Assembly (NCBI GenBank): GCA_976226885.1
Contig: OZ320317.1
Coordinates: forward strand, 75,206,001-75,270,000
Length of the DNA: 64,000 bases
Direction: 5' to 3'
From: Iphione sp. A-MEVVRFRX5
Taxonomy: Eukaryota
Each line of letters opens with the position of its first letter. The first letter of the stretch is position 1. A program made the position numbers and the translations under genes. Positions 19,847-61,924 of the stretch are shown here, piece by piece. Under the pieces are notes generated by a model. That model saw only the letters and a list, made by a program, of their open reading frames with translations, searched no databases and was not told where the DNA came from.

Positions 19847-20905
19847 TCATCGAAGCGACTTATTTTCTTCACATATATCCCAGAGTTTATGCATAGCGTC
19901 TGGTGAGGCCAGGTGAAGCGCATAGAATTGACCGTAGTAGGGACAGTAGCCTCCGTGTAACCATCGTAGGTTACGGCCAGTGAGCAAACTATCGAAACCT
20001 GCCACCTCGACCGGACGCATATTGATGGATTTCATCACCATGCCGAACCAGGCGTCCTCTATGGCAAAGAAGGGAATGTTGGGAGCAGCCTCGACCACCT
20101 CCCGTACCGAGTCGATCGAGTAGAGGAACGCCGTACCCACAGCGTACGGGGGGAAGTATTTCTTAGGGTACTCCACGTTGGACACGTACCATTTCTTGTC
20201 TGTGTAGCGGTGAACTTTCATTTTCCAAAAGACATGTCCCACCTGAGCCCTTGGGGTGTCTTGGCCCTCTGCTCTGACCCACTCCACAGTCCTTGGTACA
20301 TTCACGTAGTTGTCGTCGGCCGTGCGAAGGACGAAGTTGGCTCGAGGGCAGTGTTTCAACGCCCACTTGTAACCCATGATCACCTTATAGGACAGGTTGT
20401 AGTAAGCGTCTTTATAGTCGTTCTGCAGTATATCGCCGTACAATGCGCTCTCGCGTTTCAGCAGGCGCTGTTCAGCATCGTTCCAACCGCCGCCGAAGAG
20501 GAAGAGGTGGCGCACGTTGGCCGTGTTGTTTTCGGAGTAGCTCGCCCAGGTAGAGCGGATCGCCTCCCTTGCCTTGACCGCCTTCGGCGTGACCGTGATG
20601 AGAATGAGCAGCTCTATGGGAACCTCTCCAGCGCAGACGTTTCGCGGCTCGATGATACTGGTGAAGTTAAAGCTGTTACAATTCTTGCAGACATGGGGTC
20701 TTGGATGCTTTGGGAAGATCCGCGTGGCCAATATACGCTGGTGGGTGGCGTAGTCCTGCAGATCGGGGTCATAGGGTTCCCAGTTGAGGATGACCAGGAT
20801 AATGATGAGTATCACTAGGGGGAGGGACCACAGGGCCCTCGTGCGTGCAACACGGCCGTTGTTGGAGCCCATGTATATCAGCAGTCTTTGTCGAAAGACA
20901 TCCAT
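19847..20905 (-). CDS. GT31-family beta-1,3-glycosyltransferase (B3GALT/B3GNT/brainiac-like), paralog A, about 352 aa type II membrane protein
   Basis: N-terminal TM (LWSLPLVILIIILVILNW), REAIRSTW, YGDILQNDYKDAYYNLSYK, ADD metal-site motif, FPPYAVG, EDAWFG and C-terminal His. The ORF-track start 20968 lies in a polypyrimidine tract before acceptor CCAG|G (exon starts 20927); first ATG is 20905. Confidence 0.95.
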   Translation of the reverse strand: MDVFRQRLLIYMGSNNGRVARTRALWSLPLVILIIILVILNWEPYDPDLQDYATHQRILATRIFPKHPRPHVCKNCNSFNFTSIIEPRNVCAGEVPIELLILITVTPKAVKAREAIRSTWASYSENNTANVRHLFLFGGGWNDAEQRLLKRESALYGDILQNDYKDAYYNLSYKVIMGYKWALKHCPRANFVLRTADDNYVNVPRTVEWVRAEGQDTPRAQVGHVFWKMKVHRYTDKKWYVSNVEYPKKYFPPYAVGTAFLYSIDSVREVVEAAPNIPFFAIEDAWFGMVMKSINMRPVEVAGFDSLLTGRNLRWLHGGYCPYYGQFYALHLASPDAMHKLWDICEENKSLR

Positions 20906-21164
20906 GTCGAACCGCTTCAGACGCAGCCTGGATGGATAAAAAAATGTTAAAAAAATGATGACACACATTGAAAAAAGGAAGACAGAAACAGCAGTAAATG
21001 TGGGCTAATAGGGGAGATATAGAGGCAGATTAGGAGGGATCCGACAGATACACAAATAGGACAGGCAGCTACAGAACCTCGAATCAAGAAAACCAGACAA
21101 ACTTATAGATATTGAAAAGGTTTAATGTAGTAAGAGATGTTGGTAGTTAATGTTCCCGCTCTCA

Positions 21165-23899: not shown

Positions 23900-24960
23900 T
23901 TTTAAATTCACCAGGAATTGTTCTCATTATGGATATTGTTCGTCCTCTATTGTGTTACTTTCTCTCAGAATGTTTCTGGTTGTCCCCCTCTGTTCATCGT
24001 CAAACATCTTCAGCCTGAGGTTGAAGGTGGCTTCAACAGGCGTAGACATCACTGGTGGATTTTCTGCCATTCTACCTCTAGGTTTAGATGTTGCCTGGTG
24101 AGTTGGCGTTAAAATTGTCTTTTTCATACTTCGGGCTGTAGCCATACAGATCTTAAATTTGTTTTGATTTTGGGTGGTGTTGCCTTGTAGTTATCTCACC
24201 TGTCTTTTGTGTTGGCTCTGGCGGTTGTAGGGAATCAAAGATTTTATGTTTCTTTTGCCAAGAAGCAAATTATTAATTTCTTATAGCACTAGACTCGTGG
24301 CTGCTATATCTATATCATCTAAACTGGCATTATACAAGCATGTTCAGTAAGGTAGCCTTGCCACTGTGTCCTATTATATTTCTCCCTTCAATATGCATGC
24401 CTGATTCGATGTGCATAATGGGCAAATACTTTTCCAAGGTGTGCTGTCATACTAGTTGCATACTGAAGGACTTTTTCCCAAACAAATTTGGCATGAAGTA
24501 CCTGTAAAATCTTCCCAACTCTCAGAAATATTTAGATATTAATTCTAGAAAGCAACAGTACATCTGGGATGTCCTGGCTTTGTATAATGTCTAACATATC
24601 TTGGTTGTGATGTATATCCCAATGCTCCTATTATGTTTTTTTGCAAGCCTCCCATGGTATGTGATAAACTCCCCATGGGAATCGTCTTCCCCAAACGTGA
24701 ACTGATTTGCCTTTAACATCAAGTTCTCATCCTCAGCACACAGACTGAAAAGTGTACAATTATAAAAAATACACCCATAGAATAGTCCTTTCATTGTACT
24801 ATTACATATGATTCCACTATGCAGAAATTGTGCCTCGTCTCCTGGTGTTATGACATCTGCCCTTTGAATATGCACATCAAGTTCTTCCATGATCAACCCT
24901 TCTCGCCTGGTGTTCAGCACACCTCAGAACATCTCGAAGTATGGGTCATTCTTTTTAGCA
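23900..24960 (-). mobile_element. Heavily decayed Penelope-like retroelement (RT C-terminal part, Cys linker, GIY-YIG remnant)
   Basis: Hand translation across stops and frameshifts, in PLE order: IPMG (24671-24682), CPLCTSNQACILKGE (24380-24424), QGNTTQ (about 24170-24186), RNILRESNTI (about 23950-23980). A hammerhead-like pLTR motif lies at 25437. Confidence 0.5.
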
Positions 24961-25436
24961 AACAGAAGTCAGTATTCCCAAATACATCTTGGATATTTAA
25001 CTGTAGATCAGCCACAATATTTGTCAAGGAGCCTGAAAAATATTAAAATATCTATTTATTTTTGTACAATATGGCAATATCGTTGGTTTTTATATTTCTA
25101 CACTTTTACTTTACCAGGTGGTAATCTATCATTCCAGGACAACTGTGATTAATTGATTGTGATTTTCATCTGTGATACTCCAAGAATGTTCTTTACAGTT
25201 TACGAGTTGATGGCTTAGTAATTTAATCAATTATATACCATGATTCCAGAGATGGACGTTTTTTCAAATAGAACGTTTATTATCACTTTAATTTACATGT
25301 CTGAGCATGACTGTACATTGTAATAACCAAGGTCTTCAGCCACAAGCAATGAATCAATATTAGACTGATTATGGTAACTTAAGCCACTAACCGGCCAAAA
25401 ATGGTACTTCAGGTTTATCATATCTCACTGTATTTA

Positions 25437-25472
25437 CCCATGATGAAGGCAGTTTTTTGCCGAAATGTTGGG
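25437..25472 (+). ncRNA. Degenerate minimal type I hammerhead ribozyme motif (Penelope pLTR type)
   Basis: CCC-ATGATGA-A-GGCA-GTTTTT-TGCC-GAAA-TGTT-GGG then AATAAA (25479-25484): stem I CCC/GGG, stem II GGCA/TGCC; core differs from CUGANGA at C3. Confidence 0.6.
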
Positions 25473-26578
25473 AATTGTAATAAAACAGTCTGAAACCTGA
25501 CCTCCTGTGTTGTGTTGGTGTGTTCTTCACACATATAGCAATCTATCTTATCGTCAGCTCCATAATTGGATACGTCAGCCAGTAATCAAGCAAATAAAGA
25601 TCTGTGTGGTCCAGAAATGGTGCTGGTGAGTTGATGTCCCCCTTACTGTCTTTGTGCCTATTTTGCCACTTTCACCATTCATGGTAGAGTGGATGATGAG
25701 TGTTGGTGGGAATTCGACTTTGTATGCATATTTGTAGCTGCACTGCTAACTGGATGGTTTTGAAATGCTTCTTTTCTTGGTCATCTGGTGAGGAATTGTC
25801 CCCTGTCACTGCCATTGTTTGATTCTAGTTCTTGGCAATTTATTCAAAGAGAAGCTTTCGTTGTTCCACATTGCTCTCCCTTTAACAGGCAGTCACCAAA
25901 AAAATGAACAATAAAGATAATGTAGAGGTGATAGTGTCCCATCCTTTGCAGTTGTAGACTGCACTCTGTGACATGACAGTATGAGGGGCCCAATCAATAT
26001 TGTAAAGGGCCTGACCAGTAAGAAAGAGGGCCCAGCCATTTAGGAAGGGGGCCCTGCCGCTTGGGAAGGAAGCCCAACCACTTTGTAAAGGGGGCCCAAG
26101 TGATGTGCCTTGTGCCCTGGGCAGCTACTACTTTGTAACTACATACTTCAGAGAATAATTGGAGGAAGGCACAGACAAGAGTAATACTCTGATCTGTCAC
26201 ATGACACTTGTGTCTGCTATAAATATGGATTCTGTTTAGCAAATAAATCAGTCTGCACTTGGAACTACCACATGAAACTTGTCTCTTTGGGGATGCTTAA
26301 GAACACATACCCAATTGGAACTACATTAAGGGCTGGCAGTTGGAGTAACCATAAGGAGTGAACAAGTGGAATTACTAAGTCAGGATTATAGTTACCATAG
26401 GTAGATTCCATCAAGTGGGATTATTAACACACATTAATTACAATAATAATGCCTATTCATCTATGTCGAGTATTAAAAAGACCACATTTCTGTTATTATG
26501 GCTGCCACCAAGGCATTATCATCTTCATTTCCTGAAATTGCTTGGGGTTGTAAGCTGTTTTGCCTGTCCTCTCCCACT

Positions 26579-26600
26579 GTATATATATATATATATATAT
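26579..26600. repeat. (TA)11 microsatellite
   Basis: Directly visible. Confidence 0.93.
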
Positions 26601-29600
26601 GAAATACATGTAGAGTGGAACCACTATTTCAGATCATACCGATTTCCAACCAAATCTGATATTGTGACCATTTAAAGTGGGAACAGAGATACTGTCTATA
26701 CTTAATCAAAATGCAAAGTGAACAATTTCCAACCAAATCGATATCCAACTGGTCGCACCTCCAGACACACATGCTAGGATCATATCTATTGTATTTTAAT
26801 ACCTATTTGCAACCAGAGGTACAAGGGAAACCACTCCTTCCCTACAGAAGAGAATGTCTGAAGAGATACTCATTGTATAAGTTTTATCAGTGGTGTTAGT
26901 ACAACAAGTCCTCCCTTTTTGGTATTAGCATGACCTCTCGGAGCCCTCTACACCTCCCTAACATCCCCCTAACACCTCCAAGCATACATACTTTAAAGGG
27001 TGCTTACTCATCAAATTTAGCACTTTTTTGACTTTGACTTGTCAAATTAAGCACTTTTCGGTCATTTTTTTAGCATTTAATTTGACTGGAAAACAGGTAT
27101 CCAGTTCTTGGTGCATTACTCTATTTACTTGGTAGAGACAGAGGGAGAAAGGGAGTTGATATGCAGGGTTGATCCTTCCCAAAATCGATTTCTGACCATT
27201 TTCTCTATTCCGACCAATTTAGCTTGGACTGGGGAAGTGGTTTGAAATAGCGTTTTAACTATACATCTAAAATATGTTGCTTTAGGGTCGATGCTATGCA
27301 GATTTATTATTTGCTAAAGGTTTGGTAACAGCTAGGTGATATACATGTACTTTGCTCAGATGACCTTCCAGCAGTTATCAGATGACTATCAAAAGGTGCA
27401 ATAACTGAAGTAATTGACTCATCCCCATACTGTCATGCAGCCATACCCACCCAGCACATGACATGATAGTCCTACTTTTTCTATGGTGCCACACAATGTT
27501 CAAAATAAAACAAAAATTTTCTAGTTTCCATGTGAGTGTACTGCATTTTCTTATATACTTCGAAAATAAATATAGATGCATCACCATGTTCTCAATTGAT
27601 ATTGTAAAGGCCACGTTAGCCTTTTATGATAGTCTGGCCAGAACAGAATTCAAGAGGAGGCTTTAAATATAGGGGTCACTGGGTGCTTAACATCCTTGCA
27701 TGCACACAACACCTCCAGGTTAAGATTTCTACTGCACCCAGCACCTTGGTGTGCACAGTTGCATCCTTATGGTAGAGCCAACATTGCACACACTTTCATG
27801 ACATCATGAAGTGATATGATTGAATAAGAGCAGATCACTCCACCCCCCTTATTTGGAGGAGGGAACCCTATTGGTCAGATAATATTCTAAAGGCTGTTAC
27901 TTTGTATCTTTGGTAGAATGCACACTGTTACTGGCTGAGATAGTTCTGGCTGAATGATACAGAGTTATAAACTGTTGAATTGGCTAACTGGAGAGTCAAG
28001 GCCTCTGATTGGTGGGATTCTGCTGGAAGATTATACAGGAGACTGGCTTGAAAGGAAATAGATTATTTGCGACTGGCTGCAACTTGTTCATATCTTTATT
28101 GCACAATGCAATTTACAATATACATCCATACATTGACATACCTTTGACATGTGACAATCATGATTCTAATACTGTCACACATGAGGGACGGTGCTGCTTG
28201 AATGTTGTCTGCATAGATTGGTTATGTGAGTCACATAACAAAATGACATAGCATCATTGACCATGGAAGGCTTTTGATTGACAGTTATTGTGATCATAAA
28301 ACATGTCCTGTCATGCGGCAATGTGTCAATTGTTCTTCAGGTTCAATTTAGAAAATTTTCTAATCATACTGCTATGAGATGCATTTGTATAATTGTTTAC
28401 ACTTATGATGATATTGTGTGAAACAACTTTGAATAAATTGGCAGGAGCATGGCTTCAAACTTCTGAGGATGGCACCTTGAGTCATTGTCTTTGTTTCTGG
28501 GTAGAGTTAGATGACAAATTGTAGTTTGCTTTTAGGAAACCAAAAAGAGTAAATCCTATGAGATACCATAAGCCGGAGTTATACTGGATGTGTATCTGTA
28601 AGGAATAATTGCAAACAGGAGATTTGCACGGTTCAGTTTTTTCAGCCTCAAATTTAACCAGCAAGAGAAAAAGGAAGAAAACGAGTACTGTATGTCCTCA
28701 TTCGGTCATTGGTCATTACCTATAAATGCCTATGGAAGAGAAAGGCCACATAGCAAAGCGATGGAAAGCATGACATAAAAACATAGAATTATATTGATGA
28801 GGCGGAATGAATATAACAGACAGCGGCGGCTGGTAGGGAATTAGAATAGGCTCTATTTACCTTTACCAGACATCCGCAGCTAATGACCATGTGATCTGAA
28901 GTTGAACGTGACAAATATGGTGACAATACAAAGAGATTTTTACTTTTAATAGCAACTGAAATATTCCAATGACAAATGGTACAAATGACATGTGTTCGGT
29001 CATATGACAAGGAAAATACCTGTCATCCTTTTGGGGCTAGAGCAGAGATATAAATCGTACGGCCTGCCCACATTGTGGCATATTGACGGTCTTCTCTCAA
29101 TGCTGAGGTTTCTATATATTACAGCTACACGACAAATAAACGGCAATGTCGGTACATGTACAAGGTAACATTCAATATAATTATACTCTACGAACATGGA
29201 TAACGATGTTTTGCAAATTGAGATCAGAAAAAAAAGAGAATTGCTTCGGTGGCTCAATAGTCGGACATTACACACATAGAAGATATTTGGTAAACAGAAT
29301 ACAAACCGTGATGCATATTTACTACAAGGTCAACCAAATCAGTCAAGTTTGATATAAAATCGAGATCTACTAATATATTCTATCGCCAATTAATCTTACC
29401 TTGGTCTCAAATAATTTTATCAACGTCATTTAAGAAGGTCCTGATTTGTAAATTTCTAAGCACGGACAAATGTTATTATGTATGTAATTACAAAACTTCG
29501 AACATTCAAGTACATTTATCACCATATGGACGCTCATGCGTTGACTCAGTTATGCATTCATTTATTCCTTTACATACATGCCCCTACCGAAACCTCAAAA

Positions 29601-29938: not shown

Positions 29939-31087
29939 TTATCTGAATAGGTTTAACTGACACAGCTTCCACAATTTTTCCATGGCTCTGGCATTTACCC
30001 AGTGGATGCTGAAAAATTTGCCTCCAAGGGGACACCTGTGCTCTAGAAGCTCATCCAGTAAGGCACCTTTAAGCAACTCGTCGAAGCCTTCTTCGTTCTT
30101 AACTTCCATCTTGATTTTTATCATGACCATGCCGAACCACGCATCTTCCATGGCAAAGAATGGGACATCCGCACTAGCAGCAACCACTTCGCGAGCCGCA
30201 GGCATTGAATAGAGAAAGGCACTACCAACTGCATAAGGTGGATACAACTCATAGGGGTACTCGTTAAATGAGACATAGAATTTTACATTACGCTGTCGAA
30301 TGACACGCATTTTATCCACTACATGACCCACCTGGACCCTCTGAAGAAAGTTCTTTTCCTTATTTATGTACGTAATGATCGCTGGAAGGTTCAAATAGTT
30401 ATCGTCAGCTGAACGCAATATGAATTTGGCATGTGAACAATACTGGAATGCCCACTTATAAGCTGTGACAACCTTATAGGAGAGGTTATAATATGCATCT
30501 TTGTAATCATGTTGCAAAACATCTCCATATGTCGCGTGTTCTGCATCAATGATGCTTTGCTCTTCCTCGGACCAGCCACTTCCATATAAGAACACATAAC
30601 GTATATTGGCAGTGTTTTCCTTTGAGAAGGTGGCCCATGTTTTTCGAACCATCATCCTGGAAGTAATGCTCCCCGGTATAGTGGTAAGAACAATGAGTAA
30701 GTCTACTATTCGTGTCCCACGATGACATAGGTTTTGGGGATTGATGAGCACATTGAAGTCCATCACATTACATGCATTGCAGGTTAAAGGCCTGAAGAAG
30801 GCAGGGAACTGCCGTGTGGTGAGTACCTTGAGTTGCGCAGCCGCACGCAGAAACTCCTGTGTCTTGTACTCCTTGGCGAGTATATCCATGGCTTGGTACA
30901 GCCTGTGGATAAGACGACTCTCCTTCTCTCCATCTGTGAGGCCAGTCTCATCCAACCCCGTAGGATCATTATGATGCGGAGTCCTAAAGCAGCAGATCGT
31001 GTAGTTTAGAATGACGATCACCAGGAGGAAGCACAGCAGAAGCAATGTCTTCCTCCACCTGCACATCTGGGCGGTGAATGATGCCAT
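29939..31087 (-). CDS. GT31-family beta-1,3-glycosyltransferase, paralog B, 382 aa type II membrane protein
   Basis: TM (LLLLCFLLVIVILNYTICC), RMMVRKTW, YGDVLQHDYKDAYYNLSYK, ADD motif, YPPYAVG, EDAWFG, IHW. Putative acceptor TTTTGAAAAG|G 28 nt upstream of the ATG (exon starts 31115). Possible AATAAA at 29561-29566. Confidence 0.95.
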   Translation of the reverse strand: MASFTAQMCRWRKTLLLLCFLLVIVILNYTICCFRTPHHNDPTGLDETGLTDGEKESRLIHRLYQAMDILAKEYKTQEFLRAAAQLKVLTTRQFPAFFRPLTCNACNVMDFNVLINPQNLCHRGTRIVDLLIVLTTIPGSITSRMMVRKTWATFSKENTANIRYVFLYGSGWSEEEQSIIDAEHATYGDVLQHDYKDAYYNLSYKVVTAYKWAFQYCSHAKFILRSADDNYLNLPAIITYINKEKNFLQRVQVGHVVDKMRVIRQRNVKFYVSFNEYPYELYPPYAVGSAFLYSMPAAREVVAASADVPFFAMEDAWFGMVMIKIKMEVKNEEGFDELLKGALLDELLEHRCPLGGKFFSIHWVNARAMEKLWKLCQLNLFR

Positions 31088-51140: not shown

Positions 51141-52168
51141 TTTAGAAGAGGGATTCTGATTACTTTGATGGCTTCATTAAACATACTGTATGGCAATGTT
51201 CGCTTTGGATGTACGCTTTTTTCGGCCGAGTTCTGGGTATTATGGGATCATCTGAAATGGCCTATATGTGTGGGTGAGACAGTGTCCTGATGGATCTAAC
51301 TGCCCGCTACGATACTTAAGCCATGGTTGAAAGAGGGCTTAGGCCGGTTTTACATGTACACATTGACTTTCACATCAAAATTTGTGTTCTAAGTAATTTT
51401 TGGACAGGTTGGCATGAGATAATAAGAAGTTATGTAGGTTGAGGAATATATTATAGAAAGTCACTGGTTGTGCATCCGTTTCCAGTATAACCCGTCCCAG
51501 ATGGGTTGGTCAAACACAACTGGATGTGAAGGCATTACATACAGACATAAATGAAAAGGCTTGTTGAGTTCAGTGACCACCAAGTAACACAGTCACATCA
51601 ATGGATGTGAGAGCCTGAACAATGGGTACCTGTAAACCCCACCATACGTTTGCATGGGAAACTATAAGTCTTTGCTACCACATATAATTCATAACCCAGA
51701 AGTCAATTATTACCCATACAAAGGCTGGAAAGTATGATTGCTTTAGCAGGACCGTCTATGATTGACCCTATAACAGAATCAACATTGACAAATGACTCCG
51801 GAAGCTATTCACGTTTGATCTCTTATAACTCTAAGATACCCACAGTACATTCCATTCATGGTTTTTACTTCAGAAGCAGCCATAGCGGTTAAAATGTTCT
51901 GAAACCATAAAGAAATACAAATTATTAGTACGAGAGAAACAGACGTTTGACTGTACAGTGGTCTAAGTTGATTGAAGGGTGTGGTCAACCTTCCAGTCGG
52001 AAATCACCCTTAACCCATTCTTTTCAGCCTGTGCTGCTACTTACATCTGCATTTAAGTCACGATATCTGAACAAATCATCACCCAAAACATGCACTGGAT
52101 CACTGATAAACATGGCAAAATGACATACGCGTACATGCACAGATTGCAGCATGCACACCAAACATATA

Positions 52169-52346
52169 CAGTGGAGTCTCTATTTACGACCACCACATGG
52201 GACCAAGCTCAAATGGTCTTATTAGCAAATTTGGTTGGAAATAGACTATAATTTTGTATAGGAATCATCATTTTGGTACCCATTTCAGGTGGTCTGAAAT
52301 AGAGAATAGTTGCAAAATGATATGGTCGTAAATAGAGACTCCACTG
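52169..52346. mobile_element. 178-bp Tigger/pogo MITE (second copy of the 35557 family)
   Basis: Perfect 24-bp TIR CAGTGGAGTCTCTATTTACGACCA / TGGTCGTAAATAGAGACTCCACTG; TA TSD; interior collinear with 35557-35733. Confidence 0.95.
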
Positions 52347-52365
52347 TATACCCCGTATATAAATA

Positions 52366-53400: not shown

Positions 53401-54099
53401 CAACAGGCGTGTATATAAATGTGTATAGAATTAAAAGATTAAATGAAAATGAGGATTAGTTGGGTGGGCAAGCCCAGTCGACGAGAGAATGAGAACGAAC
53501 AGAGGGCAAAGCAGTAATTTATGGATCCCTTAATGGGTGGGGTGGGGGTATGAGAAGCAGAAGCGCCCTCTCTCGCCATGTGCCTTTACACTGTCATTCT
53601 GCCCTCTCATTTCCAGTGACACTGCGACCATTCCACATTTTCTCTGGGGAGGCCATTAGTTTTGTTCGCACTTTGTAGGATGTGTGGCTGACTGAAGTTG
53701 TTTAGTGACTGTATAACAAACTCACCCTGACTGTAATCAGTATGCTATTTCAACAATTTTATGGCTGCCATCTGGCTCTGGTGTGAAGTCCCTGCTCTAA
53801 AAGTTCACACCTAACTGTATTGTTGATGTGATATGTCACTTTGGTTCACAATATCCAGTGACCGGAGGGTGAGGTAACCATATTTTTTGTTTGGCTTTAT
53901 AGGATTACATGGGGAAGTGGTCCGTTCTAAGCAAATTTGACTGTATTTGCCCTCTCATCGCCTACATAAGCTGACAGCATCATGAGGTTTCATCATACAG
54001 GAGAAACTTGCTTTGCGACCACCACTTGGGTCGGCCCAAAATGGTCGTAATTCTGAATATGGTCGCAAAGTGATTGTAGAGGGGGTCTGGGCTTGTAAG

Positions 54100-54218
54100 C
54101 ATATCCTTTTCTCTCTCTCTCTCTACAAATCAATTAGTCTAGTGTATACATGTAATAGTCCATATTAATGCTTCAATGAAGTCATATCCCTTTCTCTCTC
54201 TCTCTCTACAAATCAATT
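54100..54218. repeat. 36-bp direct repeat (CATATCC..(CT)n..ACAAATCAATT), two copies inside the transposon 3' region
   Basis: Copies at 54100-54135 and 54183-54218. Confidence 0.85.
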
Positions 54219-54335
54219 GGTAGAAATAAGAAACAAAACAAAATAATTCAAACTGAAGTGCCCATTTATTCTAGCATATAGATAAGAGTAAAAATAAGAT
54301 AAACAAATCAATAAATAGTATGTTATGAATGAAAA

Positions 54336-55886
54336 TCACTGGGGTTTAAAAAAAGAGTCAATAGTGCACTGTTTCTTCTTGGATTGTTGTACATGCTTGT
54401 CAAAGGAGTTCATGGTGGCCAGTAGGGTCTCCAGGGGGGTGTTGGCACCATGATGGAGAAAGTGATGTCTCAGCTGCTCCATCATGTCCATGGCCTTTGC
54501 ATGGGTGATTGGAGATGGTGATGTGTCTTCTTCTTCTTCATCCTCCTCTTCCTCATGATCCTTCTTTGGCAACAGGTCTGAGTCCACATCCTGATTGTGG
54601 GCTGGGAGACCTGCATCCATGCCACAGTAGTCATCTGGTAGGCATGGATCTACCATAGGGAGGACTCTCTGTGCTTTCCTCACTAATTCTGCCAGTGGGA
54701 TGTTATCTTCTTCATCTTCTTCCTCCTCCTCCTCCTCCTCCTCCACTGGACTGGGCTCATCCAGAATCTTCACTCCAGCTTTGAGGAAGCATTTCCTCAC
54801 TGTCTCAGGTTTCACCAGCTGGAGTGAGTCCCTCACCCAGTAGACCACCCGGTGAAGATCCACAGACTTCATCAGGGACTGAAGGTCTATGGGCCCCTCA
54901 GTGGAGTCAGCCTTCTGGATGAAGTAACTGAGGAGCTTGCTCTTGTAGTGGGACTTCAAATTCTGGATGATGCCCTGATCCAGTGGCTGGAGCTTGGAGG
55001 TAGCATGTGGAGGGAGGAACACCATCTCCACATTGCTTAGGCTCATATCATGTGGATGTGAGGGGGCATTGTCCAACAGTAGGATGACATTTCTCCCTTG
55101 CCTCTTCATCTTGTGGTTGAATTTGTGCACCCACTCCTGGAATATGGAGGATGTCATCCAGGCCCTGGAGTTTGCCTTCCAGGTGACAGGGAGTGTAGAC
55201 ATGTCCACATGCCTGAAGCACCGGGGCTTCTGGGCCTTCCCTATCACCAGGGTCTTTTCAAACTCTCCCTCCATGTTACAACATAGAGAGAGAGTGATCC
55301 TTTCCTTGGATTTCTTGACTCCACTGGCTGAAGATCCTTTCTGGGCAAGGGTCTTGTCTGGCATTATCCTATGGAAGAGCCCGGTCTCATCCATGTTGTA
55401 GATGTCCCGGGGGGCATATCCCCTGAGCTTCTCAGGGAGTTGCTGGAGCCAATCCTCCACTGCCACCTCTGAGACACCACCACTCTCCCCACAGACCTTC
55501 AAGGCCCCAATGGAGTGCCTGGTCTTGAAGCGTTGGAGCCACCCCACTGAGGCCTTGAAGTCTGGCAGGTTGAGCTCCTTGCTCAGGGTCAGGGCCTTCT
55601 TCTGGATGGCAGGCCCTGAGATGGGGATGTTCAGTGACCTCATCCTGCAGAACCACTTGTAGCAGGCTTCATCCAGGTCAGAGAGGTCAGTGGAGTAGTG
55701 GTGCCTCTTGACTGAGGGGTCTGGTGTTTTCTCATACTGCTCCATGATCTCCCTCTTTCTCTTGAGGATACACTGGACTTGAGTCTTGCCCACTTTGAAT
55801 TCTTCAGCAAGACTTCTCTGGCTTCTTCCAGTGGAGACCTTGATGAGCTTCACCTTGTCACCAAGGGAGAGTTCATTTCTTGGCAT
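54336..55886 (-). CDS. pogo/Tigger transposase (CENP-B-like HTH + DDE_1), 516 aa
   Basis: ATG 55886 (MPRNELSLGDKVKLI); HTH-psq-like and CENPB HTH (FKASVGWLQRFKTRH); YNMDETG, LLLDNAPSH, LQPLDQG (DD30D by hand count); C-terminal PIP-box-like QCTIDSFF; AATAAA 66 nt after the stop. Confidence 0.96.
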   Translation of the reverse strand: MPRNELSLGDKVKLIKVSTGRSQRSLAEEFKVGKTQVQCILKRKREIMEQYEKTPDPSVKRHHYSTDLSDLDEACYKWFCRMRSLNIPISGPAIQKKALTLSKELNLPDFKASVGWLQRFKTRHSIGALKVCGESGGVSEVAVEDWLQQLPEKLRGYAPRDIYNMDETGLFHRIMPDKTLAQKGSSASGVKKSKERITLSLCCNMEGEFEKTLVIGKAQKPRCFRHVDMSTLPVTWKANSRAWMTSSIFQEWVHKFNHKMKRQGRNVILLLDNAPSHPHDMSLSNVEMVFLPPHATSKLQPLDQGIIQNLKSHYKSKLLSYFIQKADSTEGPIDLQSLMKSVDLHRVVYWVRDSLQLVKPETVRKCFLKAGVKILDEPSPVEEEEEEEEEDEEDNIPLAELVRKAQRVLPMVDPCLPDDYCGMDAGLPAHNQDVDSDLLPKKDHEEEEDEEEEDTSPSPITHAKAMDMMEQLRHHFLHHGANTPLETLLATMNSFDKHVQQSKKKQCTIDSFFKPQ

Positions 55887-55891
55887 CTTGG

Positions 55892-55937
55892 CTGGAGAGG
55901 TCTGGAGAGGTCTGGAGAGGTCTGGAGAGGTCTGGAG
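55892..55937. repeat. 10-bp tandem repeat (TCTGGAGAGG), about 4.6 copies, immediately 5' of the transposase ATG
   Basis: Directly visible. Confidence 0.95.
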
Positions 55938-56037
55938 GTGTGTCTTCACTGGAATCCAGGAGAAGAGTGATTTCTGGAGCTGTCTGGACCTCCTTATGTA
56001 TGCAAGGTGCTTCAGGTTTGGCGGGAAACGCCCGCGA

Positions 56038-56526
56038 CCACTCTTGGCCTCACCCCTCCAGGGTGAGAGACCATCAAAGTCGTCGAAGTTGACGCCTCGA
56101 CATCCCGCGACCACTCTCGGGCTACCCATCCACGGTGTGAGGAACATCAAAGTCGTCGAAGTTGACGCCTCGACATCCCGCGACCACTCTCGGCCTCACC
56201 CCTCCAGGGTGAGAGACCATCAAAGACGTCCCCGTTGTCGCCCTCGACATCCCGCGACCACTCTCGGGCTACCCCTCCACGGTGTGAGGAACATCAGAGA
56301 CGTCGAAGTTGACGCCTCGACATCCCGCGACCACTCTCGGCCTCACCCCTCCAGGGTGCGAGGACCATCAAAGTCGTCGAAGTTGACGCCTCGACATCCC
56401 GCGACCACTTTCGGCCTCACCCCTCCAGGGTGAGAGACCATCAAAGTCGTCAAAGTTGATGCCTCGACATCCCGCGACCACTCTCGGCCAACCCCTCCAC
56501 GGTGTGAGGAATATCAGAGACGTCGA
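56038..56526. repeat. CpG-rich 73-74-bp minisatellite, about 6.7 units, inside the transposon 5' region
   Basis: Unit starts at 56038, 56111, 56184, 56258, 56331, 56405 and 56478. Confidence 0.97.
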
Positions 56527-57029
56527 TGGTCGCAAAGTGATATTAAAATGTACTAAAAACGACCCTAGGAGGTGTGGTCGGAGGCTGAATATGGTCGCAA
56601 AGCAATATGGTCGCAAAGTGAGTGCCTTTAACATAGGAAATGCACTGAGAATAATTCCGTTCCGACCCAAAATGGTCGCAATAGTCGATTTGGTCGCAAA
56701 GTGAGAGGGTCGCAAAGCGAGTTTCTCCTGTATATTTTAATTCATTAGTTCGGTTAGTTCTTTATGCCCTCTCCTTTCGTCTATACCAGTTACGGACCTT
56801 CTCTTTCTTTCAACCGCTCGACCATTTCCGTCCATTCAATCTCTCCTTTATAAGCGTAGTTCTGTCCATCTTGTTTCTCCCCGTGTATCCCTCCACTCTT
56901 TCATCTCCTCCGTTCCTCCCTCCCTCCCTTCATCTCTGTCTGTTTGTTTGCTTGTCTATCTCCCTCGACGCCTCTGTTTGCTCTCTGTCCTCAGAATTCT
57001 ATGACTCCCTCATCCACTTCTTCCCCGTT

Positions 57030-61072: not shown

Positions 61073-61924
61073 ATGACCGATCTGGACGCTTACACGACCT
61101 CCGTCATGAAGGGAGTCAACCTGGCCTGTCAGCATTTCCAACAGGCCGGCGACATGGGTGACGACGTCACCGACTCCTACCACCTGACGTCCCTTGACGC
61201 GTCGTGCCACTTCAGCGTCCTGGAGGACGGATCCATGACGTCATCGCCAGGTTATGAATCCATGGGATACCCTTCTGCACCTATGGCTCCGAGTAGCGAC
61301 GCGCTGAACACGGCTATGACGTCGTGTGGATTGGCTATGACGTCCTGTTCAACTCTGACATCATCGAATCAGGGATATCAGGAGGTCCATGCTATCCCCA
61401 GACCAGAAACGCCCGACCAGACCAATATGACAACGCCATTGTCTTCGCTGCGCACATCTTCCTCCCATTCTGGTGATCTAAACGGTTCTCCGAGTTCGCG
61501 CAAGTCCGACTCGGTCCCGGCCGAGGCAAGCCGCGGGGTGAGTTATGACAGTGTCATGGTGTGGCTGAACCAGCAGTCGTGCGGCGGCACCGTCAAACGG
61601 AAGCGGAAGATCAACAGACGCCAACGTCTGGCGGCGAACATGCGCGAACGGCGCCGGATGGTGTCGATGAACAGCGCGTTCGAAGACCTGAGGAAGACCA
61701 TCCCGACGCTGCCGTACGAAAAGAAACTCTCCCGGATACAAACGCTTCGTCTGGCCATGGACTATATCAATGTCATGACCGAAATCCTCCATAGTCCACA
61801 AGACTCTGTTTCTGCTGCGACCAACTCTGGCCCACCTGGAACATCCTCTCACGGCGGAGCAGTCCCAGCATCACGACTCTCGACGGTGACCCAATCGGGA
61901 CCTGATCACCTCCAGTACTGGTGA
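61073..61924 (+). CDS. Class II bHLH transcription factor, PTF/48-related family (Ptf1a/Fer1-like loop, Fer3-like basic region); 283 aa, single coding exon
   Basis: [65 protein letters not shown]; IPTLPYEK is the Ptf1a/Fer1 loop. ATG in context CAAGATGA; GC-rich island. Confidence 0.95.

What the first reader, a model, noticed from the sequence alone, without database searches (positions are those of the whole stretch)
54336..55886. Transposase ORF is almost CpG-free despite being GC-rich
Seen: I count only 5 CpG in 1551 bp (near 54850, 55222, 55382, 55408, 55531), four of them in Arg codons. Roughly a hundred are expected at an estimated 50-55% GC. The host bHLH and GT31-A ORFs, and the element's own 5' repeat, are CpG-rich. 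The frame is intact, so this is not simple post-insertion decay. Inference: the lineage evolved under heavy methylation with purifying selection, either evading silencing or mutation, or it arrived by horizontal transfer from a globally methylated, vertebrate-like genome.
Basis: partly seen in the sequence, partly recalled or inferred. Interest (0 to 1): 0.7.

Follow-up and report, generated by a model that had tools for sequence, protein, structure and literature searches.

The report
CpG-purged Tigger transposase genes
An intact jumping gene of the Tigger/pogo type has had almost every CpG removed from its transcribed part while keeping a CpG-dense front end. Four unrelated Tigger lineages in this animal genome show the same pattern, which points to a host CpG-directed defence that the elements are selected to avoid.

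Summary
Window 54336-55886 (minus strand) is an intact 516-aa Tigger/pogo transposase ORF with 5 CpG against 104 expected (o/e 0.048, GC 51.8%).

It sits in a complete 2.7-kb element with 23-bp TIRs and a TA duplication. The 711-bp 5' part has CpG o/e 1.09.

The trait is not peculiar to this copy:
- All 30 fetched family copies have ORFs with 0-9 CpG, and so do three other Tigger lineages of the same genome (76%, 47% and 34% protein identity).
- Five relatives from other genomes have o/e 0.36-1.13.

The codon pattern is extreme. NNC|G:NNT|G is 3:216 against 590:177 in other contexts, and NCG:NCA is 1:161.

Synonymous changes that create a CpG occur in single copies (8) but almost never in changes shared between copies (1), against 2:30 for controls (p=4e-6). 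CpG hypermutability among inserted copies is only about 2-5-fold.

Best reading: selection in the transposing lineage purges CpG from the transcription unit, on top of methylation-driven decay. Horizontal arrival from a vertebrate-like genome is not supported.

Other first-stage notes on this genome flagged the same pattern (s1-349352, s1-325191). No methylome or RNA data could be obtained.

The parts
53996..53997 (.). TA target-site duplication at the 3' end of the element
   Evidence: TA follows the 3' TIR in 28 of 29 family copies.
53998..54020 (-). 3' terminal inverted repeat (23 bp, CAGGAGAAACTTGCTTTGCGACC)
   Evidence: pair I3: 96% complementary to 56708-56730. It holds one of the four CpGs of the 3' part.
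54021..54335 (-). 3' untranslated and subterminal region. An AATAAA signal lies at 54265-54270 (minus strand). Three CpGs (54032, 54046, 54064) lie in the subterminal stretch next to the TIR, one of them in a GGTCGCAAAG-type motif.
   Evidence: (families D4/D7). No CpG lies between 54065 and 54849.
54336..55886 (-). Intact 516-aa Tigger/pogo transposase ORF, almost CpG-free
   Evidence: DDE_1 E=3.8e-44, HTH_Tnp_Tc5 4e-19, CENP-B_N 3.5e-5. (5 CpG against 104 expected).
55887..56020 (-). CpG-free leader upstream of the ATG. It contains a 10-bp repeat (CTGGAGAGGT x4.6, 55892-55937) and a TATA-like ACATAAGG at about 55992-55999. The transcription start is inferred to lie here.
   Evidence: 0 CpG against 7.8 expected. 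The other three lineages have a similar CpG-free leader of 109-166 bp.
56021..56707 (-). CpG-dense 5' non-coding part, including the 73/147-bp tandem array at 56031-56526 whose units carry the TIR core GCGACCAC. It resembles a CpG island and is presumed to be a promoter and/or an array of transposase-binding sites.
   Evidence: 62 CpG in 56021-56731, o/e 1.09. All 29 copies with a 5' TIR have o/e 0.57-0.93 here.
56708..56730 (-). 5' terminal inverted repeat
   Evidence: pair I3.
56731..56732 (.). TA target-site duplication at the 5' end of the element

Best explanation
The ORF belongs to a young, complete Tigger/pogo cut-and-paste transposon.

Its near absence of CpG is a property of the whole transcription unit, from about 135 bp upstream of the ATG to beyond the poly(A) signal. 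At least four deeply diverged Tigger lineages in this genome share it, each paired with a CpG-dense 5' non-coding array.

**Shown:**
- The trait is host-specific and arose more than once.
- It depends on dinucleotide context, not on codon usage.
- Mutations that create CpG arise freely in individual copies but are almost never passed on by transposition.

**Inferred:**
- Methylation-driven CpG-to-TpG/CpA mutation supplies the direction of change.
- The near-zero level is held by purifying selection in the transposition-competent lineage.
- The most likely reason is that CpGs in the transcribed body are the substrate through which the host's CpG-methylation system (DNMT1, MBD proteins) recognises or represses transcribed elements.
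- The CpG-dense front end would stay unmethylated, like a CpG island, and drive expression.
For: - **Family trait:** ORF CpG o/e is 0.03-0.09 in all 30 family copies, about half of which are still open for at least 509 aa.
- **Genome trait:** o/e is 0.00-0.045 in 30 further Tigger ORFs of lineages B, C and D, at 76%, 47% and 34% protein identity.
- **Not a general Tigger trait:** relatives in other genomes have 0.36, 0.66, 0.97, 1.13 and 1.13. The 0.36 comes from the nearest available related genome, where the figure matches that locus's own flanks at 0.40.
- **More than one origin:** in the tree, A/B and C share a 99%-supported clade with three relatives from other genomes, of which the two that could be read (P0001, P0002) have o/e 0.66 and 0.36; D is far away.
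- **Size of the context shift:** NNC|G:NNT|G is 3:216 against 590:177, which is 240-fold. NCG:NCA is 1:161 against 187:50. Host genes shift 2-fold and the related genome's Tigger 13-fold.
- **Private against shared substitutions:** synonymous CpG-creating transitions are 8 private to 1 shared, against 2:30 for other AT-to-GC synonymous transitions (p=4e-6). Unpolarised, 1 of 90 CpG-toggling sites is shared against 52 of 298 others (p=7e-6).
- **The comparison is valid:** shared changes are mostly synonymous (N:S 23:67, against 106:77 for private; p=4e-7), so shared changes do record evolution of functional elements.
- **Weak hypermutability:** CpG sites in inserted copies mutate only about 2-fold faster in private changes and about 5-fold in shared ones.
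- **Zone limits:** the CpG-free zone has the same limits relative to the ORF in all four lineages.
- **Host machinery:** DNMT1 (RFD plus catalytic exons) and MBD are present.
- **Not a base-calling artefact:** 12 of 14 conserved Arg positions are still Arg, encoded mostly by AGR.
Against: - No methylation, RNA or small-RNA data exist for this genome in the tools. The selective agent and the transcript limits are therefore inferred.
- The private/shared test cannot by itself exclude a very high CpG mutation rate confined to active, transcribed copies. In invertebrates young transposons are reported to be the most methylated (PMC8857917).
- Selection on single synonymous CpGs would have to be effective, and this has not been measured.
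- Only Tigger lineages could be sampled properly.
Confidence: 0.55

Rival explanations
1. Pure mutational decay. Active, germline-transcribed copies are densely methylated over their transcribed body only. Deamination removes every CpG that the protein does not need, and there is no selection against CpG as such.
For: - TpG and CpA are in excess (1.57 and 1.30), and T-ending codons are enriched before G (48 of 156).
- Old interspersed repeats in the window have o/e 0.16-0.2.
- DNMT1 and MBD are present.
- The related genome's Tigger shows a 13-fold context shift.
- Young transposons are preferentially methylated in invertebrates (PMC8857917).
- The terminal branches here are too short to exclude a high rate confined to active copies.
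Against: - It needs a context effect of 240-600-fold, far above the 2-5-fold hypermutability measured in copies of these same families. It is also above the roughly 10-20-fold known for methylated CpG in mammals (my knowledge).
- The five residual CpGs are not lost faster than other C/G sites in single copies (1 of 10 positions).
- The DNMT1 gene itself, which I would expect to be methylated across its body (my expectation, not tested here), has o/e 0.5-0.6.
Confidence: 0.25
2. Selection at the RNA level. A cytoplasmic or nuclear sensor of CpG-rich, and perhaps UpA-rich, RNA degrades transposase messages, analogous to vertebrate ZAP. The elements therefore mimic a CpG-poor transcript.
For: - The CpG-free zone coincides with the presumed transcript in four lineages.
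- TpA at codon boundaries is 0.4-0.58 of expectation.
Against: - Host ORFs in the window have CpG o/e 0.6-1.09, so a CpG-RNA sensor would also hit host messages.
- TpA-creating changes are not significantly excluded from shared substitutions (p=0.09-0.14).
- ZAP is known only from vertebrates (my knowledge). No such sensor was sought here.
Confidence: 0.08
3. Recent horizontal transfer from a globally methylated, vertebrate-like genome or from a CpG-poor virus. On this reading the composition is inherited from the donor.
For: - The ORF is a compositional outlier: GC 52% in a genome of 40-41%, with G/C-ending codons.
- pogo/Tigger elements are known to transfer horizontally (my knowledge).
Against: - Four lineages as distant as 34% identity share the trait.
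- Family copies differ by up to 9% in the ORF and 30% in non-coding parts.
- No relative above 47% identity was found among 5.8 billion proteins. The vertebrate hits (Latimeria) are no closer than the invertebrate ones.
- Host genes have the same GC3, 0.52-0.68.
- Dead copies drift towards AT while shared changes do not, so the composition is maintained in place.
Confidence: 0.03
4. Assembly or base-calling artefact at methylated CpG.
For: Systematic errors at modified bases are known for some long-read base-callers (my knowledge).
Against: - Conserved Arg positions remain Arg and use AGR, which a CG-to-TG or CG-to-CA miscall cannot produce.
- The reading frames are intact.
- The adjacent 711 bp holds 62 CpGs, called normally.
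- The pattern is identical in 60 copies on 11 chromosomes.
Confidence: 0.01

Closest known systems
Tigger/pogo DNA transposons (pogo clade of Tc1/mariner; human Tigger1, Drosophila pogo)
   Same: - CENP-B_N + HTH_Tnp_Tc5 + DDE_1 transposase.
- Short TIRs and a TA duplication.
- Many copies, with derived MITEs nearby.
   Different: - The five relatives read from other genomes have CpG o/e 0.36-1.13.
- Here the whole transcription unit is CpG-free, and the 5' end carries a CpG-dense tandem array.
Mammalian LINE-1 (CpG-island 5'UTR promoter with CpG-poor ORFs) and other methylated vertebrate transposons
   Same: - The architecture is the same: a CpG-dense promoter and a CpG-depleted coding body in a genome that methylates CpG.
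- There is an excess of TpG/CpA.
   Different: - The depletion here is much deeper (o/e 0.00-0.09) than the old repeats of this same window (0.16-0.2) and than the vertebrate bulk level of about 0.2 (my knowledge).
- The host background is only mildly depleted (0.54-0.61).
- The element is a DNA transposon in an invertebrate.
- There is direct evidence that CpG-creating synonymous changes are excluded from the propagating lineage.
CpG suppression in vertebrate RNA viruses and lentiviruses under ZAP (e.g. PMC6615859, PMC12012506)
   Same: - Strong CpG avoidance at synonymous sites, maintained by selection.
- UpA is also low.
   Different: - The host's own genes are CpG-rich.
- No ZAP-like sensor is known or shown here.
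- The element lives in the nucleus as DNA.
Engineered CpG-free transgenes that resist silencing in vertebrate cells (my knowledge, not tested here)
   Same: A coding body without CpG cannot be CpG-methylated.
   Different: This is a natural, convergently evolved case, and it keeps a CpG-dense promoter.

Membership tests
Tigger/pogo DNA transposon | DDE_1 (pogo-type) catalytic domain | tested here: met
   PF03184, E=3.8e-44, full-length match 1-177.
Tigger/pogo DNA transposon | N-terminal CENP-B-type and Tc5-type helix-turn-helix DNA-binding domains | tested here: met
   PF04218 at 3.5e-5 (above cut-off) and PF03221 at 4.1e-19.
Tigger/pogo DNA transposon | Terminal inverted repeats flanked by a TA target-site duplication | tested here: met
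   23-bp TIRs with one mismatch and TA on both sides. TA follows the 3' end in 28 of 29 copies.
Tigger/pogo DNA transposon | Catalytic D-D-D residues intact | not tested
   Only the full-length domain match and the intact frame were checked.
Methylation-driven CpG decay of transposons | Host encodes a maintenance CpG methyltransferase and methyl-CpG readers | tested here: met
   DNMT1 RFD plus catalytic exons at C15:82.90-82.92 Mb, and MBD hits.
Methylation-driven CpG decay of transposons | Excess of TpG/CpA matching the missing CpG | tested here: met
   TpG o/e 1.57 and CpA 1.30. T|G codon boundaries are 48 observed against 22 expected.
Methylation-driven CpG decay of transposons | CpG sites in inserted copies mutate much faster than other C/G sites | tested here: inconclusive
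   About 2-fold in private changes and about 5-fold in shared ones, at 91 CpG positions of lineage D. The alignments of the repeat-rich region are gappy.
Methylation-driven CpG decay of transposons | Depth of depletion compatible with mutation alone | tested here: not met
   The context shift is 240-600-fold, against 13-fold in the related genome's Tigger and 2-fold in host genes. The private/shared test gives p=4e-6.
Methylation-driven CpG decay of transposons | The element body is methylated in the germline | not testable with these tools
   No sequencing run was listed.
ZAP-type RNA-level CpG avoidance | Host messages are themselves CpG-poor, so that CpG marks non-self | tested here: not met
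   Four host ORFs in the window have o/e 0.61-1.09.
ZAP-type RNA-level CpG avoidance | A CpG-binding RNA sensor in the host | not tested
   No search was made.

The most novel reading that the evidence does not exclude
An invertebrate host, probably a lophotrochozoan, runs a CpG-dependent silencing system aimed at transcribed transposons. The system is strong enough to select against single synonymous CpGs. At least two, and probably four, Tigger lineages have answered convergently. Each has deleted the substrate from its whole transcription unit while keeping a CpG-island-like promoter made of tandem repeats. This would be an evasion strategy for which I found no report.
Probability: 0.4. Interest if true: 0.7.

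Novelty: new variant of a known kind. Interest (0 to 1): 0.55.

Why it matters
CpG loss in transposons is usually read as passive decay after methylation.

Here the depth of the loss and its convergence in unrelated lineages point to active avoidance. So do its confinement to the transcription unit and the exclusion of CpG-creating synonymous changes from the propagating lineage.

If that is right, DNA methylation acts as a real selective force on active DNA transposons in an invertebrate. The role of methylation in transposon control is still disputed for that group (PMC8857917 against PMC10414810).

It would also give a sequence-only signature for finding such conflicts in other genomes: the odds ratio of NNC|G to NNT|G.

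Tried and rejected
- **Codon usage as the cause:** rejected by the synonymous-shuffle test.
- **A general Tigger trait:** rejected by five relatives from other genomes.
- **A context-specific editing process (APOBEC- or RIP-like):** rejected. Private C-to-T changes show no neighbour preference.
- **TpA co-avoidance as evidence for RNA-level selection:** only weak.
- **Other transposon classes:**
I did not try to obtain it through another tool.
  - DDE_3 gave no match.
  - Only two reverse-transcriptase fragments in the flanks could be read (o/e 0.33 and 0.59).
- **Ancestral-state reconstruction:** I used private/shared site patterns instead.
- **Sequencing runs:** none was listed, so there is no expression or methylation evidence.
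- **Host identity:** the GT31 search gave only unnamed hits. The best named bHLH hits are Lingula and Paralvinella. The atlas search was uninformative.
- **Literature:** four searches found no report of CpG-free DNA-transposon ORFs. That does not prove there is none.

Full report
**Observation.**
GC is 51.8%, 104 CpGs are expected, and o/e is 0.048.

On the minus strand it is an intact 516-codon ORF with CENP-B_N, HTH_Tnp_Tc5 and DDE_1 domains, so it is a Tigger/pogo transposase. Four CpGs are in Arg CGN codons and one spans a codon boundary. There is no NCG codon, and Arg is 21 AGR to 4 CGN.

Of 156 codons followed by a G-starting codon, one ends in C. Shuffling synonymous codons expects 41 +/- 4. 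Neither chance nor codon usage explains the pattern.

**Anatomy.**
- The ORF lies in a complete element, 53998-56730, with 23-bp TIRs (one mismatch) and TA on both sides.
- CpGs are distributed in three blocks:
  - four in the 3' TIR and the subterminal stretch next to it (54016-54064);
  - five in 1,946 bp from 54075 to 56020, where 117 are expected;
  - 62 in the 711 bp from 56021 to 56731 (o/e 1.09).
- The last block includes a 73/147-bp tandem array.
- The switch at 56021 lies just upstream of a TATA-like motif. An AATAAA lies about 70 nt after the stop. The CpG-free zone therefore looks like the transcription unit. This is inferred, because no RNA data could be obtained.

**Not one copy, not one family.**
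- The genome (1.18 Gb) holds at least 40 copies of this family.
- In all 30 fetched copies the ORF is 91-99% identical to the window's and has 3-9 CpGs. About half are still open for at least 509 aa.
- All 29 copies with a recognisable 5' TIR have a CpG-rich 5' part, o/e 0.57-0.93.
- A DDE_1 search found thousands of candidates. The 30 best loci belong to three other lineages, with 76% (B), 47% (C) and 33-35% (D) protein identity to the window's.
- Every one of those ORFs has 0-4 CpGs (o/e 0.00-0.045), GC about 51%, GC3 about 0.63 and low TpA. Where the full ORF was read, the upstream 600 bp is moderately to strongly CpG-rich.
- In all four lineages the nearest CpG lies 109-166 bp upstream of the ATG and at least 246 bp beyond the stop.

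**Host-specific.**
- The closest proteins among 5.8 billion are only 46-47% identical.
- Five relatives whose DNA could be fetched have ORF CpG o/e of 0.36, 0.66, 0.97, 1.13 and 1.13.
- The 0.36 comes from assembly ERZ25767047. That assembly also holds the best homologues of the window's GT31 and bHLH genes on one contig, so it is the nearest available relative of the host. That Tigger's flanks have o/e 0.40, and two loci read from the assembly range 0.39-0.64, so the ORF is close to the local background.
- In a protein tree, A/B and C share a 99%-supported clade with three such outside relatives, and D is remote.
- The purge therefore happened in this host lineage, at least twice.

**Background in this genome.**

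| Sequence class | CpG o/e |
|---|---|
| Whole window | 0.61 |
| 104 kb of flanks around the fetched copies | 0.54 |
| Two GT31 and two bHLH single-exon genes | 0.61-1.09 |
| DNMT1 gene region | 0.54-0.57 |
| Old interspersed repeats, window 24-28.5 kb | 0.16-0.2 |
| Two reverse-transcriptase fragments in flanks | 0.33 and 0.59 |

None of 77 non-Tigger open frames of at least 110 aa is below 0.19, whereas all 60 Tigger ORFs are at or below 0.09.

I could not sample other transposon classes properly.

**Mutation or selection.**
The products expected from deamination are present. TpG and CpA are in excess, and T-ending codons are enriched before G. The host has DNMT1 (RFD plus catalytic exons) and MBD proteins. 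Three results nevertheless argue that mutation alone is not enough.

1. **Size of the context effect.** In the four lineages NNC|G:NNT|G is 3:216 against 590:177 in other contexts, a 240-fold shift. NCG:NCA is 1:161 against 187:50. Host genes and average outside relatives shift 2-fold, and the related genome's Tigger 13-fold.
2. **Weak hypermutability.** CpG sites in inserted copies are only about 2-fold (private changes) to 5-fold (shared changes) more mutable than other C/G sites. The five residual ORF CpGs are not lost faster in single copies.
3. **Private against shared substitutions in family A.**
   - Shared changes must have been passed on by transposition, and they are mostly synonymous (N:S 23:67, against 106:77 for private; p=4e-7). 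They therefore record evolution of functional elements.
   - Among synonymous AT-to-GC transitions, those that create a CpG are 8 private to 1 shared. Those that do not are 2 private to 30 shared (p=4e-6).
   - Without polarity, 1 of 90 CpG-toggling synonymous sites is shared, against 52 of 298 others (p=7e-6).
   - TpA-toggling sites show only a weak trend.

Dead copies also drift towards AT while shared changes do not, so the GC-rich codon usage is maintained in the active lineage.

**Caveats.**
- The 30 copies are the best hits to the window copy.
- Alignments of the repeat-rich 5' parts are gappy.
- A very high CpG mutation rate confined to active, transcribed copies cannot be excluded from sequence alone. 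Young transposons are reported to be the most methylated in several invertebrates (PMC8857917). Deep-sea annelids showed no sign that methylation silences transposons (PMC10414810).

**Most likely mechanism (inferred).**
The host's CpG methylation system acts on transcribed transposon bodies. Each CpG there lowers the element's chance of staying active. Lineages that lose CpGs through the easy deamination route, and by moving Arg to AGR, therefore out-propagate the others. The untranscribed, CpG-dense 5' array stays unmethylated, like a CpG island, and also carries repeats of the TIR core.

An RNA-level CpG sensor is less likely, because host ORFs are CpG-rich. Horizontal transfer from a vertebrate-like genome is not supported. 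A base-calling artefact is excluded by conserved Arg positions that remain Arg and use AGR.

**Comparison and novelty.**
The element is a bona fide Tigger/pogo transposon. The architecture resembles mammalian L1, with a CpG-island promoter and a CpG-poor body.

It differs in three ways: the depth of the purge, its convergence in unrelated DNA-transposon lineages of an invertebrate, and the evidence for selection at synonymous sites. I found none of these in four literature searches.

Other first-stage notes on this genome saw the same pattern in other windows. I verified it independently on 60 copies.

Noticed in passing
window 52165-52350: A 186-bp MITE with perfect 28-bp terminal inverted repeats (TATACAGTGGAGTCTCTATTTACGACCA). 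The TIR shares the TA-CAG start and the ACGACC core with the Tigger element, so it is probably a non-autonomous relative.
   Followed up: no
window 56031-56526: The 73/147-bp tandem array in the element's 5' part repeats the TIR core GCGACCAC in every unit. It may be an array of transposase-binding sites as well as a promoter. This agrees with first-stage note s1-313953.
   Followed up: partly
window 24000-28500: A mosaic of old interspersed repeats, 69-85% identical to thousands of other places in the genome, with CpG o/e 0.16-0.2. This is evidence that at least some repeats in this genome lose CpG over time.
   Followed up: partly
G000:C4:99553921-99554034: An MBD (methyl-CpG-binding domain) match lies inside a 2,053-aa open frame. 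It may be a transposon that has captured an MBD, as reported for an arthropod retrotransposon family. The DNA could not be fetched.
   Followed up: no
G000: C1:21657624, C4:5005974, C4:86635767, C19:36444316, C26:21084469: Five equally scoring ADD_DNMT3-like zinc-finger matches lie in 108-aa open frames on different chromosomes, so this is a multi-copy element carrying an ADD/PHD-like finger. No clear single-copy DNMT3 was seen.
   Followed up: no
L001-L030 ORFs (family copies): Private mutations in copies are strongly AT-biased: C/G-to-T/A at 0.57% per site-copy against 0.22% for A/T-to-G/C, with no neighbour preference. Changes shared between copies are balanced. The GC-rich codon usage is therefore maintained in the active lineage.
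   Followed up: partly
window 2715-3365, 19850-20968, 29942-31087, 61073-61921; L068: Two bHLH and two GT31 single-exon genes lie in the window. Their best homologues (61% and 50% identity) lie together on one 3.67-Mb contig of assembly ERZ25767047, so synteny is conserved with the nearest available relative.
   Followed up: partly
window 55892-55937: A perfect 10-bp repeat (CTGGAGAGGT x4.6) sits in the CpG-free leader just upstream of the transposase ATG. The reading frame stays open upstream as far as 56150.
   Followed up: no
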